A stretch of DNA of 64,000 nucleotides, from assembly GCF_033153115.1 (NCBI RefSeq), contig NW_026889776.1, positions 6,014,001 to 6,078,000 of the forward strand. The letters are read 5' to 3'. Shown here piece after piece: positions 5,842 through 61,377 of this stretch. The stretch comes from Saccostrea echinata (taxonomy: Eukaryota). Made by a program: the position numbers and the translations under genes. How positions within the stretch are numbered: position 1 is the first letter of the stretch; each line of letters begins with the position of its first letter. The notes beneath the pieces are model-generated. The model was not told the DNA's origin and made no database searches. It saw nothing but the letters and a program-made list of their open reading frames with translations.

Positions 5842-6156
5842 ATGCTTGGACTTGAATTAATTTTTTTCATGTGTTCAGTGCAATTTGCAGTATTGGAACA
5901 AACTGATGTTGCTACTAACATAAAAGTGACTGCACCTGGCCAACGTATTAAAACTAGCAACGTCATTAAAGTTTTAAATATCATAGGACAGAAACAGTGT
6001 ATTCGAGAATGTTTACAGAACGGTCAATGTAAATCTGTGAACTATCAAAGACAATATCTAAATTGCGAACTTATAGCAACAAAATATGGTGATTCAGAAA
6101 CTTATTTAGTTTTGGATGCAGACTTTGATTACATTGCAATGGAAAATCAGCCGCAG
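5842..6156 (+). CDS. Copy 1, exon 1: signal peptide + PAN/Apple domain (MLGLELIFF...MENQPQ)
   Basis: ATG at 5842; hydrophobic N-terminus; PAN pattern C-x3-C-x5-C-x-S-V-N-Y-x6-C-E-L; ends CAG|GTTTGT (phase 0); 315 nt, same length as the three paralogous exons. Confidence 0.88.
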
Positions 6157-6419
6157 GTTTGTATTTTTATCAAACAATTCATTTAGCTAAGTCAAACAGA
6201 CACTTTAAAAAAGGCTTACATTTCGATTTGTAGCTATTGATAGGTTAATTTCATGTGTCGAATTTTAAAACTTCTTATTTTGCAAACCATGAATTTTGAA
6301 CAAAATTCAATGTGAAAATCGCAATTTCATAGTGAAAAAAAAAAAAACACGATAATATTAACTTTGGTGTTTATTTTTTTAACCTACCAACTTGAAGATG
6401 TATAATGACTTACTTTTAG

Positions 6420-6504
6420 GAGCTAACTGGACTTTGTAACTCAACGTCCTGTGTGGGGCAGTGTACTGTTTTGAGTAATGGAAAAGCATTCTGCATACAA
6501 AGAC
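6420..6504 (+). CDS. Copy 1, exon 2: Cys-rich linker (ELTGLCNSTSCVGQCTVLSNGKAFCIQR)
   Basis: TTTTAG| acceptor, |GTAAGC donor, phase 0 to 1, 85 nt; homologous to 35736-35820 and 57573-57657. Confidence 0.85.
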
Positions 6505-7909
6505 GTAAGCATAAACGTAAATCTTCTGAATACAAATTCTTGTTGAAGAACTATTTAAGAAGGAATACCATACAAAAAGTTTATTGCATTTTAAAAACAT
6601 ATCATATTAAATATGTTTTCAACACTGAACGACCATTATGACCATTTCAGAATTGAAAATTAACTTCTTTTTTTTTTAATTTCCAAATACATTCCAATTT
6701 TTATCGAAAATGCGATCCACTAATACTTCTTTACATACGGGTCAGCAGGCATGCTATCGAAGCCATCTTAGGACTAAAACATATCTTAAGAGATATCTTA
6801 GTCCTAAGTGAGACCATTGAATCTGTCCTAACTTAAGACATATCTTAGGATTTCTCCTAAAGTTAAGACACTGCAAGATCCGTTCTAACATGAACTTAGG
6901 AGACTCCAAACTTTGTACAATAATTTCCTATCAGACATTTAGTATGGGAGGGGGGGGGGCAAGGTGGGTCCTCCTATTACTCCCCTAAAACCTTTTACAA
7001 AAACGTTTCTTCTACCCCCGCTCCCCTCCCCAATAAATATATCGAGTTTAGAGGTTTTCCTTTTTTGTGTCTCTCAGAGTTAATCAGGAACTTTTTCTTT
7101 TTTTTTTGTTTGTACGTTTATTATACGGTTGTACATTTTAGCTACAATCTGTTGCTCTGCCCACCCCCTTCCCTCCAACTTTTAAAAACACTGAGTGCTT
7201 CGTTCCTACAATGTACCTATGTATAAATAATAGTCCAATTGTAATTTGCCGTACTATTATGATATTTCTTCTTAGCAATTAAGAAATTAAATTGACTTGA
7301 TTTAATATTGGAGTTAGTGGTTACAATTCCAAAAGTATTCAAGTGAAGATTTAGCGAGACACAGTAACTTGAAGAGGTCACCTCCAAGGGCTATTCATGC
7401 TCGCTATACCTTATATGAAATGGAGGAGGTTCTATACCGCGTCTAAAGCTATCTTACTATAATCGAGGAAGTATTTCCCTGATTCCAAGTATGGGAGCTA
7501 GATTCATCTAGCAAATCGTACAGGACATTTTACCATGAAATTTCTATTTCGAACTGGTATATCTTATTCATCAGTTTACTTTTAAAACCACATTACCACA
7601 GAGAGACATGCCATCAACTTCTGTTATACCGAGTTTACATTTTACCGCTTTCGACAGCCATGCTTGGATTCATGATACGCATTTATTCAACATCACATAA
7701 ACGCCTATAAATGAAAACTGTTTGATCAATCTAGCGTTTACATGATTCTTTCCCATTCTGTATATATTACGCAAACGTACGAACACCTAAATCCGGATGA
7801 ATATAACGAAATAAGAATATGATCAGTATCTGTTGAAAAAATTCTTCGGACTGCACCGATTTATGTGAGTCGGCCGGCAACGCCAAGCAAAGCTAATTTT
7901 ATTTTTGGC

Positions 7910-57657: not shown

Positions 57658-59947
57658 GTAAGTATAAATATATTTTTATCCGTTCAGAACACAAATAATT
57701 TGCAGGAAATTTAGAAATCAGGTAATATTTTTATATAATAACATTCTAACTCGTTACATGTGTTTTGAAATGACGTAAACTTTATGACATTTTTCCCGTA
57801 ATGAAAGCGTAGGTCTGAAGTGACTTGACGACATATTATAGTACATGTATGACACCATATCTTGGTAGTTCAGAGAAATTACTGCAAAGGATGTACTGTG
57901 ATATTTTAAGAGAAGCCTTAACCTAACTTTTTGTCGAAGCAAAGTCTTGGAAAAAGTCTTTAAAAATGTCAATAGATTGTCATCATCTAGGAAGCATGAA
58001 ATGCCTGGAGATAACGAACAGTATTCAAGCTCAAACGTCTATTAAACAGTTCAAATTTTGGAGCAGAGAAAACACGGACCTCTAAAACATCAAAGGTGGG
58101 GTCATGTGCCACGGAGGAGTGAGCATCCCCTGTATTAATTTTTGCAATTGTTTTAAAGATATTTAGGGTTAGATGAAGCGCGGTAAAAGTGCGAAATGGT
58201 ACATGTATATAGTAAAGCTTTAACTGATGACGACTAATTTGTAAAAGTAAAAGATAAGTACAAATCTAAATTATCCTTGGTCCTTTCAGAACTGCGTGAA
58301 AGGTTTTTCACTTTAATGTCTACTAATTTTTGTAAGTGATATGAGCCATGGAAAAAACTGTATGTCAAATCAGGTTGGGGAATTTCATGTAAAAAATAAT
58401 GGTTAAAATCATAATTATTTTTCTATTCACGCAGATTTTCCCCCCAAAATACTTGCATTTATTTTACTTGATTTATCATAATTAACTCTCAAAACATTAA
58501 ACATATTGAACATTAGGTGTCATTCAAGAATTACTGGTTTATTTGTAGAATTACAATAAACATATTACCGACAATATGTGCCGATACACACTTTTCCTCT
58601 GCACAATTGGTATCAGTTCATCCTAAAAGTAACGATAGTTAGCTATAACAAATCAAAACATATCATTGTAGTAAATCATAGTTATCACTATAGTGTCATA
58701 TTAATCAATATAGCGTCAGGGTTATCATTATAGTTAATCAAAGTGTCAAAGTTACCACTTTAGTAAATGAAAGAATCGAAGATATCATCGTAGTATATCA
58801 AAGTTTTAGAAGTAATTACTATAATATTATAAAGTTTAAAAGTTATTTCTTAGGTAAATCAAATGTTCTATGAGAGAAATCTCATTACGTTCACAACAAA
58901 GGTATTATAAAGTTTTGTAGATTTTCCATATTTTACCAAAGATATCTGTTGATGCCTTGGTTTTCCAGTAATTCTACATACTTTTCATGCAATACATTTT
59001 GTTTAAAATTTAAATTTTAGTTTGATACTTTTAACTTTATTTTTATTATTCAATGACTGCTACTGGCAAGAAATTTCAAAAATAAATATTTGTCTTTCAT
59101 TTTGATTGTTCTATTAGTTTGACTGTTATATTAGTAAGCTACATTTATTAATGTCATTAAGTGCATCAAGCAAGATATACAGAGCTATTATACATAATGA
59201 TATTAAGTACATTTGAGTGAAAACTACAGTAAATAAAAGTTTTCATAGTGATCACTATAGTAATTCAGTAATTCAATGTTTTTAAAGTTTTCCCAGTGAC
59301 ATAGTGACATAGAACATGAAATATGAAGATAACGAACAGTTTTCAAGCTCAAAGTCCATTTAAACAATAGAAATCGGAAGCAGAGCAACCATGGACCTCT
59401 AAAAACAGAGGTGTGATCAGGTGCCATGGAGAAGTGAGTATCCCCATGTAAATAAAAGTGTAAAAGTTATCATTATGGTTAGCTATACATTTTCATAATG
59501 TTAAAGTTATCCAAATACTTAACTATAATCTACTATTTTGAAAGTATTACTTTTGTAAGTGCAGATTACCAAAGAATTAATACATTTTATCGATATTATC
59601 AACCTGATCCAGGGGCCATACATTTCAAATTCAGGTAGACGCATAATTGTTCATCAGAGCTATGTACTGAGTCTGTCTGTTAGATACTAAAGTTAATAGC
59701 CGAACTCCTTCCCTGTGCTCTTGAATTTTCCCAATCTGGTAAAAATACCCTTGCTCATTTATATCATTTTCCGAACTCCTTGCTAGATGTTCAGGAGACG
59801 AAAAAAAAAATTAAAGAATTATCGCATTTTATCTGTATGTCCAATAAAGTCCGATCCTAACAATTGAACCTCTGATCAAGATGCCATTTACAATTTTATG
59901 TAGATGTACCTACACTTGTTTTTTCAATAGTCATGTGCAAAAAAGAC

Positions 59948-60284
59948 TGATTGCCTTTATGTTTCATTCGAGAATTTTTCACTCATATGGAGACGTCTCC
60001 ATGTACCGGTGAAGGGCTTCAAATTTAGATCCTTACTCGGCACTCAGGGCCATTGAGCAGTAATGGATCTTTATCGTGCCAACGCCTGTCGTGATACGGG
60101 GCCTTGGGTTTTTTAAAGGTCTCATCCGAAGGATCCCCAACTTTTACTTCAATTTGCCGAGCGCCAGGCGAAGGAACAGTTGCTACCTATTTTTTATCGA
60201 CTAAGGTCAGTCGCGGCCGAGATTCAAACCCACAGCCTTCCGATCACGGAGCGAGCGTTCTACTGACTGAACTACCGTGACGGC
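59948..60284 (-). mobile_element. SINE family B, full length
   Basis: Reverse-complement match to 51914-52272; decayed TSD TGTGCA(A/G)AAAAG. Confidence 0.82.
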
Positions 60285-61297
60285 TGTGCAGAAAAGAAGA
60301 CTTTTAAATAATTAATGCATTTTTTCCGCCCAAACACCTGAACCACTGAGCCTGTGGTCAACTTATGAATGGAGTAAAATGCGCACTTGCTCATTATAAC
60401 TATGCACTTTGTGCGCTAAATGTAGAGGGAGGGATAAGAATTTTTTAAAGTAAGAATTAAAAGCTAGAGCCCTACTTTGGAGCCAAAATCTCTAAGTAAG
60501 TGATCATCTATTATACAAATCTGGTATCATTTCTCATTACAACAATCTTCTTCGTTTGCCTGCTAGATGCCCAAGAGCAGAAGAGATGTTTTTCAAAGAA
60601 TTAAATAAATGCATTTTCACTTTATGGTAATATCTTAGAAATTGGCTCAGTGTTTGAAAAGAAAAAGCTAAAATGTTCAAACGTTAAGGACCGACCATCG
60701 ACACACAACGTAGAAAAAAAAAACATACAGAAGACAGAGCATTCCCTTGCAAGAAAGCACATCCACCCCCGACATCTTATTATGCACTAACCCATCCACA
60801 CAAGGTTGTTTCAATATCCTCTCTATCTTCCTTGCCAGGGGATGAAAAGAAATAGTTCATCTGAGTGAATCAGACGACGTAAAGAGCATTAAATGTTCCA
60901 AATTTGATTTAAATATGACAGAAACATAGATATAGAAATTATTCATACTGGCTGTGTATAAATGGCAATTACATTGACCTTTTTAAGGACAGACGATACA
61001 TACACGCTTTTCTTTTTAAAAACCATGACATAACAACTTTAGTTGTTCGAATCAGTAAAATGAATAAGTTTAACTGCATAAATTATGATTTTACATTCAA
61101 AATTTTGAACATCAAAGAGCAGTTGCAATTTATTGATATTTTAGAAATGTGATATTCGCATCATTTACAACCAAAATAAGTCATGAAATATAGACAAATC
61201 CATGCATTGTTTTTGGTAACATCTCTCCTTAAGTTTATGTTCATGTAAGTGTTTATTCTCATTCTGGCATGTTTAAGTAAGTGCTATTCTTTTTAAG

Positions 61298-61377
61298 GTT
61301 GTGAGATTGGCTGGGTTCGGTATGAAACCAAATGTTACCTGTTCAACCATACAAGTCAATCATGGCCGGATGCAGCA
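61298..61377 (+). CDS. Copy 4, exon 3: start of CTLD (CEIGWVRYETKCYLFNHTSQSWPDAA); remaining exons are outside the window or lost
   Basis: TTTTTAAG| acceptor in phase 1; GW....KCYLF...W.DA; |GTAAGT donor at the same position as in copy 3. Confidence 0.85.

What the first reader, a model, noticed from the sequence alone, without database searches (positions are those of the whole stretch)
5842..61377. Tandem array of secreted PAN/Apple + Cys-linker + C-type lectin genes: constant adaptor, variable recognition end
Seen: four + strand units, each starting with a 315-nt signal+PAN exon; three continue with an 85-nt 4-Cys exon and CTLD exons in compatible phases (0, then 1). By manual count the last 80 aa of the PAN exon are 82-89% identical (copy 4 vs copies 3 and 2), whereas the first CTLD exon of copies 3 and 4 is only about 48% identical (13/27). 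Known: PAN/Apple domains mediate protein and glycan interactions, and CTLDs are expanded bivalve recognition and biomineralisation (perlucin-like) domains. Inference: a small (~270 aa) secreted family with a conserved effector/oligomerisation module and a fast-evolving lectin head, i.e. a diversified pattern-recognition system. I do not recognise a named family with this architecture.
Basis: partly seen in the sequence, partly recalled or inferred. Interest (0 to 1): 0.8.

Follow-up and report, generated by a model that had tools for sequence, protein, structure and literature searches.

The report
Oyster PAN–C-type lectin gene array
This stretch of a rock-oyster genome holds a tandem family of genes for small secreted proteins that join a well-conserved PAN/apple "handle" to a faster-changing sugar-binding lectin head; the design is real but ordinary for oysters and already sits, unnamed, in public protein predictions.

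Summary
The window (Saccostrea echinata, C27:6,014,001-6,078,000) carries four + strand 315-nt signal+PAN exons. Three are followed by an 85-nt four-Cys exon and CTLD exons with GT-AG sites and matching phases. They encode intact proteins of 271 aa (copy 1), 266 aa (copy 3) and 265 aa (copy 4, whose last two exons lie beyond the window). Copy 2 is a lone PAN exon, a truncated copy of an intact chimeric paralogue.

No gap touches an exon. No RNA evidence was obtainable. The splice chains rest on collinear exons in 15 of 18 loci examined and on contiguous RefSeq models from S. cucullata.

The array belongs to a cluster of 19 PAN exons, partly duplicated at 98.6-99.7% identity. Among type-B paralogues PAN has dN/dS about 0.15 and the CTLD about 0.5, with QPD/EPN/EPT/DPT switches. 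There is no overall positive selection, and the contrast fades in older paralogues.

The same PAN+4-Cys cassette, with the same phases, also precedes F5/8C and sushi domains here. Function is inferred. The scan's first readers noted related PAN-cassette families elsewhere in this genome.

The parts
5842..6156 (+). Copy 1 exon 1: signal peptide + PAN/apple. This copy has 4 Cys; the first and last Cys of the domain are replaced.
   Evidence: ATG, GT donor, phase 0. PAN_1 E 5.3e-8. Hydrophobic N-terminus, KD 2.20.
6420..6504 (+). Copy 1 exon 2: 85-nt four-Cys module, phase 0 to 1.
   Evidence: AG/GT flanks and frame. Weak EGF_Tme5 match, E 0.0068, below cut-off.
10393..10563 (+). Copy 1 exon 3: first half of a type-A CTLD (171 nt, phase 1 to 1).
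   Evidence: 84-93% identical paralogous exons in L033, L034 and L039.
11221..11465 (+). Copy 1 exon 4: second half of the type-A CTLD plus the stop codon. No EPN/QPD motif.
   Evidence: Lectin_C 15.9-17.8 bits for the exon alone, below the cut-off of 22.6. The type-A relative P0003 scores 32.4 bits as a whole protein.
19790..20104 (+). Copy 2: intact signal+PAN exon with nothing downstream.
   Evidence: PAN_1 E 4.8e-8. No Cys or CTLD exon in 20105-33038; the best tblastn hit has E 8.5.
19356..22288 (+). Tract of copy 2 that is 93.3% identical to the 5' part of the intact paralogue at C27:5837440 (L033). Homology stops at 22288, inside intron 1.
   Evidence: blastn.
33039..33353 (+). Copy 3 exon 1: signal peptide + PAN (6 Cys).
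35736..35820 (+). Copy 3 exon 2: 85-nt four-Cys module.
41820..41902 (+). Copy 3 exon 3: type-B CTLD part 1 (83 nt, phase 1 to 0).
41991..42078 (+). Copy 3 exon 4: type-B CTLD part 2 (88 nt, phase 0 to 1).
42561..42790 (+). Copy 3 exon 5: type-B CTLD part 3, with WIG, QPD and WGD motifs, plus the stop codon.
   Evidence: Lectin_C 37.2 bits for this exon alone, above the cut-off of 22.6..
54341..54655 (+). Copy 4 exon 1: signal peptide + PAN.
57573..57657 (+). Copy 4 exon 2: 85-nt four-Cys module.
61298..61377 (+). Copy 4 exon 3: type-B CTLD part 1 (80 nt). The gene continues outside the window at C27:6081650-6081737 and 6091466-6091695, where the EPN and WAD motifs lie.

Best explanation
The window is one block of a large tandem cluster in Saccostrea echinata. 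Its genes encode small secreted two-module lectins: signal peptide, PAN/apple domain, four-Cys mini-module, one C-type lectin-like domain.

Shown:
- Exon structure, phases and intact frames of copies 1, 3 and 4.
- The same architecture as contiguous predicted proteins in other oysters.
- Two CTLD kinds in the window: type A in two exons, without a canonical sugar motif, and type B in three exons, with QPD in copy 3 and EPN in copy 4.
- Strong purifying selection on PAN and the four-Cys exon, and about three-fold weaker constraint on the type-B CTLD.
- Growth of the cluster by tandem and segmental duplication.
- Evidence for recombination in intron 1. The copy 2 lineage has a type-B-like PAN but a type-A-like four-Cys exon and CTLD. 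In this window its 3' part is missing.
- A PAN+4-Cys two-exon cassette that ends in phase 1 and also precedes F5/8C and sushi-type domains elsewhere in this genome.

Inferred:
- The proteins are secreted.
- The CTLD binds glycans, Ca-dependent in type B, with paralogues differing in sugar preference.
- The conserved PAN+4-Cys cassette serves as a shared protein-binding or oligomerising handle that links different recognition heads to a common partner.
- The biological role is humoral or mucosal recognition.
For: Domains and gene models:
- PAN_1 in 4 of 4 first exons. Lectin_C at 37.2 bits in copy 3's last exon.
- Canonical splice sites and frames.
- PAN, Cys and CTLD exons in the same order on the same strand in 15 of 18 PAN-bearing loci examined in this genome.

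Public proteins:
- A HMMER search of 1.84 billion representatives with the copy 3 PAN exon gave 68 proteins at E<=1e-3. The best are P0001 (265 aa, S. cucullata XP_062606562.1, type B) and P0003 (267 aa, XP_062606560.1, type A, recorded with the same longest-contig length of 253,661). Both carry PAN_1 + Lectin_C above Pfam cut-offs.
- Of 10 hits scanned, 5 carry both domains above the cut-offs.
- ESM Atlas: the nearest clusters are molluscan Lectin_C + PAN_1 sets of 69, 142 and 326 members.

Selection:
- Mean dN/dS over 6 pairs of 4 type-B lineages: PAN 0.15, Cys 0.17 (3 pairs), CTLD exons 1.07, 0.33 and 0.48.
- PAN dS 0.50 against CTLD dS 0.17-0.55.
- Fisher p 0.0068, 0.0032, 0.0039 and 0.085 (all 15 pairs).

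Sugar motif: QPD (copy 3), EPN (copy 4, g6125, g5886, P0001), DPT (g5740), EPT (g5956).

Chimera in the copy 2 lineage:
- PAN dS 0.35-0.38 to g6125 against 0.80-0.84 to copy 1.
- Cys-exon dS 0.37-0.44 to the copy 1 group against 1.0-1.7 to type B.
- CTLD dS 0.24 to copy 1.
- The AU test rejects one clade for all type-A-linked PANs, p 0.029.

Cassette in other architectures:
- P0053 (PAN + F5/8C) and P0022 (PAN + sushi-like), both S. echinata RefSeq. Exon 1 ends in phase 0, the Cys exon is 88 or 85 nt with phase 0 to 1, and the cargo starts in phase 1.
- P0041 is PAN+Sushi+SRCR and P0039 is PAN+Fibrinogen_C.

Secretion: hydrophobic N-termini.
Against: - No transcript evidence. The one run offered (X1; 'RNA' is only a guess) covers repeats and introns only, shows no exon-exon joint, and has one contig running unspliced across the intron 3/exon 4 border of copy 1.
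- The word-indexed search of 5.8 billion proteins with P0001 returned 7 proteins and none encoded by this window, so these genes seem unannotated.
- The homologous models are automatic RefSeq predictions. I could not see their RNA support.
- dN/dS of the CTLD is below 1 except in the 26-codon first exon (1.07, not tested for significance).
- Among older type-A genes PAN and CTLD are about equally diverged.
- Copy 1's CTLD lacks EPN/QPD, and its last exon alone is below the Pfam cut-off.
- The AlphaFold2 model of P0001 is confident only in the CTLD. PAN has pLDDT about 55 and the linker 33-42, so nothing is learned about the handle.
- Blocks at 98.6-99.7% identity may be uncollapsed haplotypes, which would inflate copy number.
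Confidence: 0.72

Rival explanations
1. The proteins are shell-matrix (perlucin-like) biomineralisation proteins rather than recognition lectins.
For: NCBI's automatic name for the closest full-length relative is 'perlucin-like protein'. A 2026 proteomics paper lists PF00024 (PAN) among domains of phosphate-mineralising systems (passage seen).
Against: The name rests on CTLD similarity only. Perlucin, from recall, is a single-CTLD protein without PAN. Paralogue-specific QPD/EPN switching and relaxed constraint in the CTLD fit glycan recognition better. No tissue data exist either way.
Confidence: 0.1
2. Much of the array is not functional: dead copies, lone exons and assembly duplicates, with few or no expressed genes.
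For: Copy 2 is a lone exon. Two paralogues outside the window, g5826 and g6098, carry premature stops in the last exon. No protein from the window appears in the protein collection. Blocks A and C are 98.6-99.7% identical, in the range expected for oyster haplotypes (the range is recalled). No RNA support.
Against: Copies 1, 3 and 4 have intact frames and splice sites across 4-5 exons. dN/dS of 0.15 in PAN and 0.3-0.5 in most CTLD exons shows selection on the proteins.
Confidence: 0.12
3. PAN exons look constant because gene conversion homogenises them, not because the protein module is constrained.
For: DNA similarity between units extends 140-400 nt upstream of the ATG. The copy 2 lineage shows that exchange in intron 1 does occur.
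Against: Synonymous divergence of the PAN domain (mean 0.50) is as high as or higher than that of the CTLD exons (0.17-0.55), while its non-synonymous divergence is 2-3 times lower.
Confidence: 0.05
4. PAN exons and CTLD exons belong to separate neighbouring genes, and the joined models are an artefact.
For: No RNA evidence here. Introns are long, up to 9.7 kb, and one holds an assembly gap.
Against: The order PAN, Cys, CTLD recurs with compatible phases in 15 of 18 loci with very different intron lengths. PAN exons end without a stop at a GT donor. CTLD first exons start in phase 1 with no ATG or signal sequence of their own. The PAN-less relative on C1, by contrast, has its own 49-nt signal exon. 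Contiguous RefSeq proteins exist.
Confidence: 0.03

Closest known systems
RefSeq predictions in Saccostrea cucullata: XP_062606562.1 'perlucin-like protein' (P0001, 265 aa) and XP_062606560.1 'uncharacterized' (P0003, 267 aa)
   Same: Same architecture and length. PAN is 71% and 53% identical to copy 3. They are of type B and type A respectively. Both are recorded with the same longest-contig length, 253,661, which suggests they are neighbours as here.
   Different: Another species, automatic models, no study of them found. P0003's closest relative here is g5584, not copy 1.
Characterised bivalve C-type lectins (signal peptide plus 1-4 CTLDs), as reviewed in PMC12842671 and PMC10140915
   Same: Secreted CTLD proteins with EPN/QPD-type motif variation. 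Lineage-specific tandem expansions.
   Different: Neither paper's main text mentions a PAN/apple partner. 'PAN' occurs only as an author name or as 'pan-genome', and 'apple' occurs 0 times (passages seen).
Mollusc PAN/apple + fibrinogen-related proteins (4 C. gigas genes, Lottia FReDs, B. glabrata FREP1), as cited in PMC7588048
   Same: An N-terminal PAN/apple domain joined to a lectin-type recognition head in molluscs (passage seen). C. gigas K1Q0F5 has PAN_1 + Fibrinogen_C.
   Different: The head is a fibrinogen domain, not a CTLD. The four-Cys exon and the phases were not examined for them here.
Collectins and ficolins (vertebrate lectin-pathway recognition molecules)
   Same: Works-like analogy only: different sugar-binding heads (CTLD, fibrinogen) share one N-terminal adaptor that meets common partners (recalled knowledge).
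   Different: The adaptor there is a collagen stalk that forms trimers. No collagen repeat is present here, and no partner is known.
Apple domains of factor XI/prekallikrein and the PAN module of HGF/plasminogen
   Same: Pfam PAN_1 match, with six Cys in copies 2-4.
   Different: A single PAN and no protease domain. P0001 found no solved PAN chain among the best 60 of 202 PDB matches; all 60 shown were CTLDs.

Membership tests
PAN/apple domain (Pfam PF00024 PAN_1) | Profile match above the curated cut-off | tested here: met
   4 of 4 first exons score 31.9-33.2 bits against a cut-off of 21.4.
PAN/apple domain (Pfam PF00024 PAN_1) | Conserved Cys framework: six in apple domains, a four-Cys core in PAN modules (framework recalled) | tested here: met
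   Copies 2, 3 and 4 have 6 Cys after residue 25. Copy 1 has 4, having lost the first and last together.
C-type lectin-like domain (Pfam PF00059 Lectin_C) | Profile match above the curated cut-off | tested here: met
   Copy 3's last exon alone scores 37.2 bits against 22.6. Copy 1's last exon alone scores 15.9-17.8 bits, below the cut-off, but the full-length type-A relative P0003 scores 32.4 bits. I did not scan joined window models.
C-type lectin-like domain (Pfam PF00059 Lectin_C) | Ca-site-2 sugar motif EPN/QPD plus WND (motif names recalled) | tested here: inconclusive
   Type B: QPD...WGD in copy 3 and EPN...WAD in copy 4. The tripeptide is present, but the N of WND is replaced. Type A (copy 1): no EPN/QPD. 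Binding was not assayed.
Perlucin (name carried by the nearest RefSeq model) | Single-CTLD nacre protein without other domains (recalled) | tested here: not met
   PAN and a four-Cys module precede the CTLD. Shell localisation is not testable here.
Collectin/ficolin | Collagen-like Gly-X-Y stalk N-terminal of the head | tested here: not met
   There is no collagen match or repeat in any exon. Pfam lists only PAN_1 and Lectin_C.
Mannose-receptor family (best PDB sequence matches) | Multiple tandem CTLDs with Cys-rich and FNII domains (recalled) | tested here: not met
   One CTLD per protein. The PDB matches cover only residues of about 108-265 of P0001.
Oyster PAN+4-Cys cassette proteins (grouping proposed here) | Exon 1 = signal+PAN ending in phase 0; exon 2 = 85-88 nt with 3-4 Cys, phase 0 to 1; next domain starts in phase 1 | tested here: met
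   Met by copies 1, 3 and 4, by the gene for P0053 (88 nt) and by the gene for P0022 (85 nt).

The most novel reading that the evidence does not exclude
Oysters use one two-exon N-terminal cassette (signal peptide + PAN/apple, then a four-Cys mini-module ending in phase 1) as a common handle. Exon shuffling has placed it in front of several unrelated recognition heads: at least two or three CTLD lineages, F5/8C discoidin, sushi/SRCR and fibrinogen-related domains. If the cassette binds one shared partner, such as a protease, a haemocyte receptor or itself, this would be a molluscan counterpart of the collectin/ficolin principle, in which many heads feed one effector route. The window would then show the shuffling in progress: a chimeric paralogue, a lone cassette exon, and a PAN-less sister lectin gene that has a plain signal exon in the same phase.
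Probability: 0.25. Interest if true: 0.65.

Novelty: new variant of a known kind. Interest (0 to 1): 0.4.

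Why it matters
Bivalves lack antibodies and rely on very large lectin repertoires. How recognition heads are coupled to downstream effectors is poorly understood.

This locus gives clean, testable gene models for a lectin subfamily that recent bivalve CTL surveys do not describe in their main text. 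It shows that the N-terminal PAN+4-Cys part is the constrained part. It also links that part, by identical exon phases, to other lectin-like families in the same genome. That makes one experiment worthwhile: find what the cassette binds.

If nothing binds, the locus is simply one more lineage-specific lectin expansion.

Tried and rejected
RNA support. The look-up of sequencing runs gave one run with 6% of the words. Laid on 5800-11500, it covered only repeats and introns. No conclusion on splicing or expression is possible.

Structure. AlphaFold2 of P0001 with a 14-row alignment gave mean pLDDT 60.9 and was good only in the CTLD. I made no fold search because the parts of interest were unreliable. 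The PDB sequence search showed only CTLDs among the 60 rows listed. Pfam on the 28-aa Cys exons gave 0 families for 2 of 3; copy 1 had two sub-threshold matches, EGF_Tme5 at E 0.0068 and SLR1-BP at E 0.0076.

Domain swap between CTLD types. The maximum-likelihood tree of last CTLD exons (36 rows, 71 columns) separates type A from everything else (100/99) and nests type B among lectin genes that gave no PAN match nearby (against the list). The AU tests do not reject the alternatives:
- all PAN-linked CTLDs in one clade, p 0.054;
- types A+B in one clade, p 0.11;
- type B without the PAN-less C1 gene, p 0.40;
- the non-A group attached next to the copy 1 group, p 0.43.
These groups were named after I had seen the tree. 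Two rows were dropped before these tests: Cgig_P0017, whose cut was wrong (score 25), and Scuc_P0011, a long branch. The deep swap therefore stays a hypothesis. Only the chimera of the copy 2 lineage has support (p 0.029; p 0.108 once those two rows are left free).

Gene conversion of PAN: rejected on dS.

Literature. No paper with PAN/apple together with a C-type lectin in molluscs turned up in searches. Several listings were author names or plant receptor kinases. Supplements were closed.

Other ORFs in the window gave no significant Pfam match.

Full report
WHAT THE WINDOW IS. The window is 64,000 bases at 33% G+C, with four N runs. The genome search places it at G000:C27:6014001-6078000. 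The assembly is Saccostrea echinata, on three grounds. RefSeq proteins XP_061169463.1 (P0002) and P0084 are 100% identical to translations of C3 loci L044 and L045. The contig lengths recorded for P0002/P0053 (15,108,934) and for P0022 (6,385,996) equal those of C3 and C19.

THE OBSERVATION. Four + strand ORFs hold a 315-nt exon that starts at an ATG and ends at a phase-0 GT donor: 5842-6156, 19790-20104, 33039-33353 and 54341-54655. All four match Pfam PAN_1 (E 4.8e-8 to 1.2e-7) and begin with a hydrophobic stretch. I had no signal-peptide predictor, so secretion is inferred.

blastn between units finds a second conserved block in units 1, 3 and 4. It is an 85-nt exon with AG/GT flanks, four Cys, phase 0 in and phase 1 out.

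CTLD exons follow in phase 1.
- Copy 3 has three (83, 88 and 230 nt).
- Copy 4 has an 80-nt first one at 61298-61377. Its other two lie outside the window, at C27:6081650-6081737 and 6091466-6091695.
- Copy 1 has two (171 and 245 nt).

Exon lengths sum to 816, 801 and 798 nt, that is 271, 266 and 265 aa with no internal stop.

GAPS. No gap touches an exon. One ends 138 nt upstream of copy 3's ATG. One lies in copy 3's intron 2. One lies further upstream, between copies 2 and 3. One is intergenic (against the exon list). I could not test continuity with reads. By coordinates alone, the two other copies of copy 3 on C27 keep the same order and nearly the same spacing: 6824 and 7128 nt against 6827 nt. 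I read no letters for the gaps.

ARE THESE SINGLE GENES? There is no RNA evidence. The only run offered holds 6% of the words, and its label 'RNA' is a guess. Laid on 5800-11500, it covers repeats and introns. It shows two joints, both inside repeats at 7952-8480, and one 169-nt contig that runs unspliced over the intron 3/exon 4 border. The case therefore rests on two other lines.

(a) Collinearity. I fetched 20 further stretches of G000 and searched them exon by exon. Of 18 PAN-bearing loci:
- 15 have PAN, Cys and CTLD exons in the same order and strand despite very different introns;
- 2, on C3, have PAN, Cys and the first two exons of a third CTLD kind, with the last exon beyond the fetched stretch;
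- 1, copy 2, has PAN only.
Two of the 15 (g5826, g6098) carry a premature stop in the last exon.

(b) Public proteins. phmmer of the copy 3 PAN exon against 1.84 billion representatives gave 68 proteins at E<=1e-3. The best full-length hits are S. cucullata XP_062606562.1 (265 aa) and XP_062606560.1 (267 aa). Their sequences run without a break through PAN, the four-Cys stretch and a type-B or type-A CTLD, and both pass the Pfam cut-offs for PAN_1 and Lectin_C. Related models exist in C. virginica, C. gigas and C. angulata, and one has a Thr/Pro-rich stalk between the Cys module and the CTLD (P0011, 562 aa).

These are automatic predictions, and I could not see their RNA support. A search of the 5.8-billion collection with P0001 found 7 proteins and none from this window, so the genes here appear unannotated. 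Joined models were never scanned.

THE WIDER CLUSTER. The PAN exon has 68 matches in the genome at E<=1e-3, a lower bound (150 of 179 candidates were scored). Nineteen of them, at E<=7e-24, lie on C27 between 5.459 and 6.125 Mb.

The four-unit block recurs three times: at 5.60 Mb (A), 5.83 Mb (B) and 6.02 Mb (C, the window).
- A and C are 98.6-99.7% identical over 3.3 kb around the PAN exons of units 1, 2 and 4.
- B is 83-87% identical for unit 1, 92% for unit 2, 98.8% for unit 4 and 99.7% for unit 3. Unit 3 was compared only from the ATG onward.
These are either very recent segmental duplicates or uncollapsed haplotypes. Reads would be needed to tell.

COPY 2. Its PAN exon is intact. Homology (93.3%) to the intact paralogue at C27:5837440 (L033) runs from 19356 to 22288 and then stops inside intron 1. 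Neither the queries from copies 1 and 3 nor the paralogue's own exons find a Cys or CTLD exon in 20105-33038; the best hit has E 8.5.

The intact paralogue is a mosaic.
- PAN: dS 0.35-0.38 to the type-B gene g6125, against 0.80-0.84 to copy 1.
- Cys exon: dS 0.37-0.44 to the copy 1 group, against 1.0-1.7 to type B.
- CTLD: type A, dS 0.24 to copy 1.
On the PAN tree, forcing all type-A-linked PANs into one clade costs 18.4 log-likelihood units (AU p 0.029). With the two copy 2-lineage rows left free, p is 0.108. Exchange in intron 1, by unequal crossing-over or conversion, is the simplest reading. The window's copy then lost its 3' part, or that part is unassembled.

CONSTANT HANDLE, VARIABLE HEAD? 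This holds among the four distinct type-B lineages (copy 3, copy 4, g5740, g6125; 6 pairs), in means:

| part | dN | dS | ratio |
|---|---|---|---|
| PAN domain | 0.076 | 0.504 | 0.15 |
| Cys exon (3 pairs) | 0.102 | 0.583 | 0.17 |
| CTLD exon 1 | 0.177 | 0.165 | 1.07 |
| CTLD exon 2 | 0.127 | 0.390 | 0.33 |
| CTLD exon 3 | 0.264 | 0.547 | 0.48 |

Within CTLD exon 3 the ratio is 0.54 in the loop part. Counts of non-synonymous against synonymous differences differ between PAN and CTLD with Fisher p 0.0068 and 0.0032 in the two independent pairs, and 0.0039 and 0.085 in two further pairs.

Because PAN dS is not reduced, the constancy is purifying selection on the protein, not homogenisation. The sugar-motif tripeptide differs between paralogues: QPD, EPN, EPT, DPT. 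The same switching is seen in PAN-less relatives.

- No domain-wide ratio exceeds 1.
- The 26-codon first CTLD exon is too short to test.
- Among 36 type-A pairs the contrast is weak or reversed once divergence is old, e.g. PAN 59% vs CTLD 41% for copy 1-g5584, but 49% vs 61% for g5459-gC33.

TWO OR THREE KINDS OF HEAD. Types A and B share the phase-1 intron just before the WIG motif. Type B, and type C on C3, have one more intron, of phase 0.

A lectin gene on C1 (29,386,575-29,389,997, minus strand) has the same three CTLD exons: 59-68% identical to copy 3 by exon, 63% overall, with dS 0.50-0.74 to type B. Instead of PAN and Cys exons it has a 49-nt signal exon that ends in phase 1. No PAN or Cys match appears in the 12 kb upstream.

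The last-exon tree puts type B with this gene (96/86), nested among other lectins that have no PAN match nearby, and far from type A (100/99) (against the list). The PAN tree puts the PANs of the copy 1 group, type B and type C in one clade (96/96) that excludes older type-A genes. This suggests heads were exchanged behind a conserved cassette. But AU tests on 71 columns do not reject the alternatives (p 0.054, 0.11, 0.43), so I leave it as a hypothesis.

THE CASSETTE ELSEWHERE. Prompted by first-reader notes on other pieces of this genome, I scanned further hits.
- P0053 (S. echinata XP_061169133.1): PAN_1 + F5/8C.
- P0041 (C. virginica): PAN_1 + Sushi + SRCR.
- P0039 (C. gigas K1Q0F5): PAN_1 + Fibrinogen_C.
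- P0022 (S. echinata XP_061181033.1): PAN_1 followed by a Cys module and further domains.

The genes for P0053 (C3, 10.04-10.28 Mb) and P0022 (C19, with twins on C23) are themselves tandem arrays. Short stretches around their splice sites show the same design. Exon 1 ends in phase 0. A Cys exon of 88 nt or 85 nt runs from phase 0 to phase 1. The next domain starts in phase 1. I did not examine a PAN-fibrinogen gene in this genome.

WHAT IS KNOWN. PMC7588048 (passages seen) says PAN/apple domains occur in four C. gigas fibrinogen-related genes, in some Lottia FReDs and in B. glabrata FREP1. A 2025 review and a 2023 genomic survey of bivalve C-type lectins (passages seen) do not mention PAN or apple in their main text; their supplements were closed. 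Seven searches found no paper on PAN plus CTLD in molluscs. ESM Atlas holds molluscan clusters with both Pfam families, of 69, 142 and 326 members, and a cnidarian one with EGF as well. The architecture is therefore catalogued but unstudied.

VERDICT. The genes are new, apparently unannotated members of an unnamed oyster lectin subfamily. The better-supported additions are the selection contrast, the chimeric and truncated copy 2, and the shared PAN+4-Cys cassette with fixed phases across several families. Function remains inferred. Interest is moderate.

Noticed in passing
window 56623-57384: 157-nt tandem repeat, 4.9 copies, 84% matches, inside intron 1 of copy 4. It produces three overlapping long ORFs that have no Pfam match.
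   Followed up: partly
window 1572-2300, 25997-27219 and 28445-29061 (inverted): 166-nt (332-nt) satellite-like tandem repeat. It is present before copy 1 and twice, in opposite orientation, downstream of the truncated copy 2.
   Followed up: no
window 8858-9190, 51930-52262, 53132-53411, 59965-60268 (-), 48300-48491 (-) and others: Interspersed repeat of about 330 nt, copies 80-90% identical to one another. It had by far the highest depth in run X1 (727 in bin 8856-9046), so it is a high-copy mobile element.
   Followed up: no
window 62636-63366, minus strand: Two overlapping ORFs in intron 3 of copy 4 that look like the tail of a retroelement. The only match is a weak zf-RVT hit, E 0.095.
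   Followed up: partly
L051 (G000:C1:29384001-29394000), minus strand: PAN-less secreted lectin gene: a 49-nt signal exon ending in phase 1, plus the same three CTLD exons as type B, with an EPN motif.
   Followed up: yes
G000:C27 5.60, 5.83 and 6.02 Mb; also C18/C27, C46/C19, C75/C3 and C23/C19: The four-unit block recurs three times. Several contig pairs give matches with identical scores, which suggests either recent segmental duplication or uncollapsed haplotypes in the assembly.
   Followed up: partly
window 5842-6156, and L034, L039: The copy 1 group of PAN domains has lost the first and the last Cys together (Arg and Phe/Ile in their place). This fits the loss of one disulfide as a pair.
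   Followed up: no
L032:4548-4715 (C27:6092548-6092715): Weak CTLD-like match (30% to copy 1's last exon, E 7e-4) about 0.9 kb downstream of copy 4's stop codon.
   Followed up: no
window 19374-19790, 32902-33039 and 53966-54341: DNA similarity between units (73-79%) extends 140-400 nt upstream of the ATG. This may be a shared promoter or 5'UTR. For copy 3 it runs up to the edge of the assembly gap.
   Followed up: no
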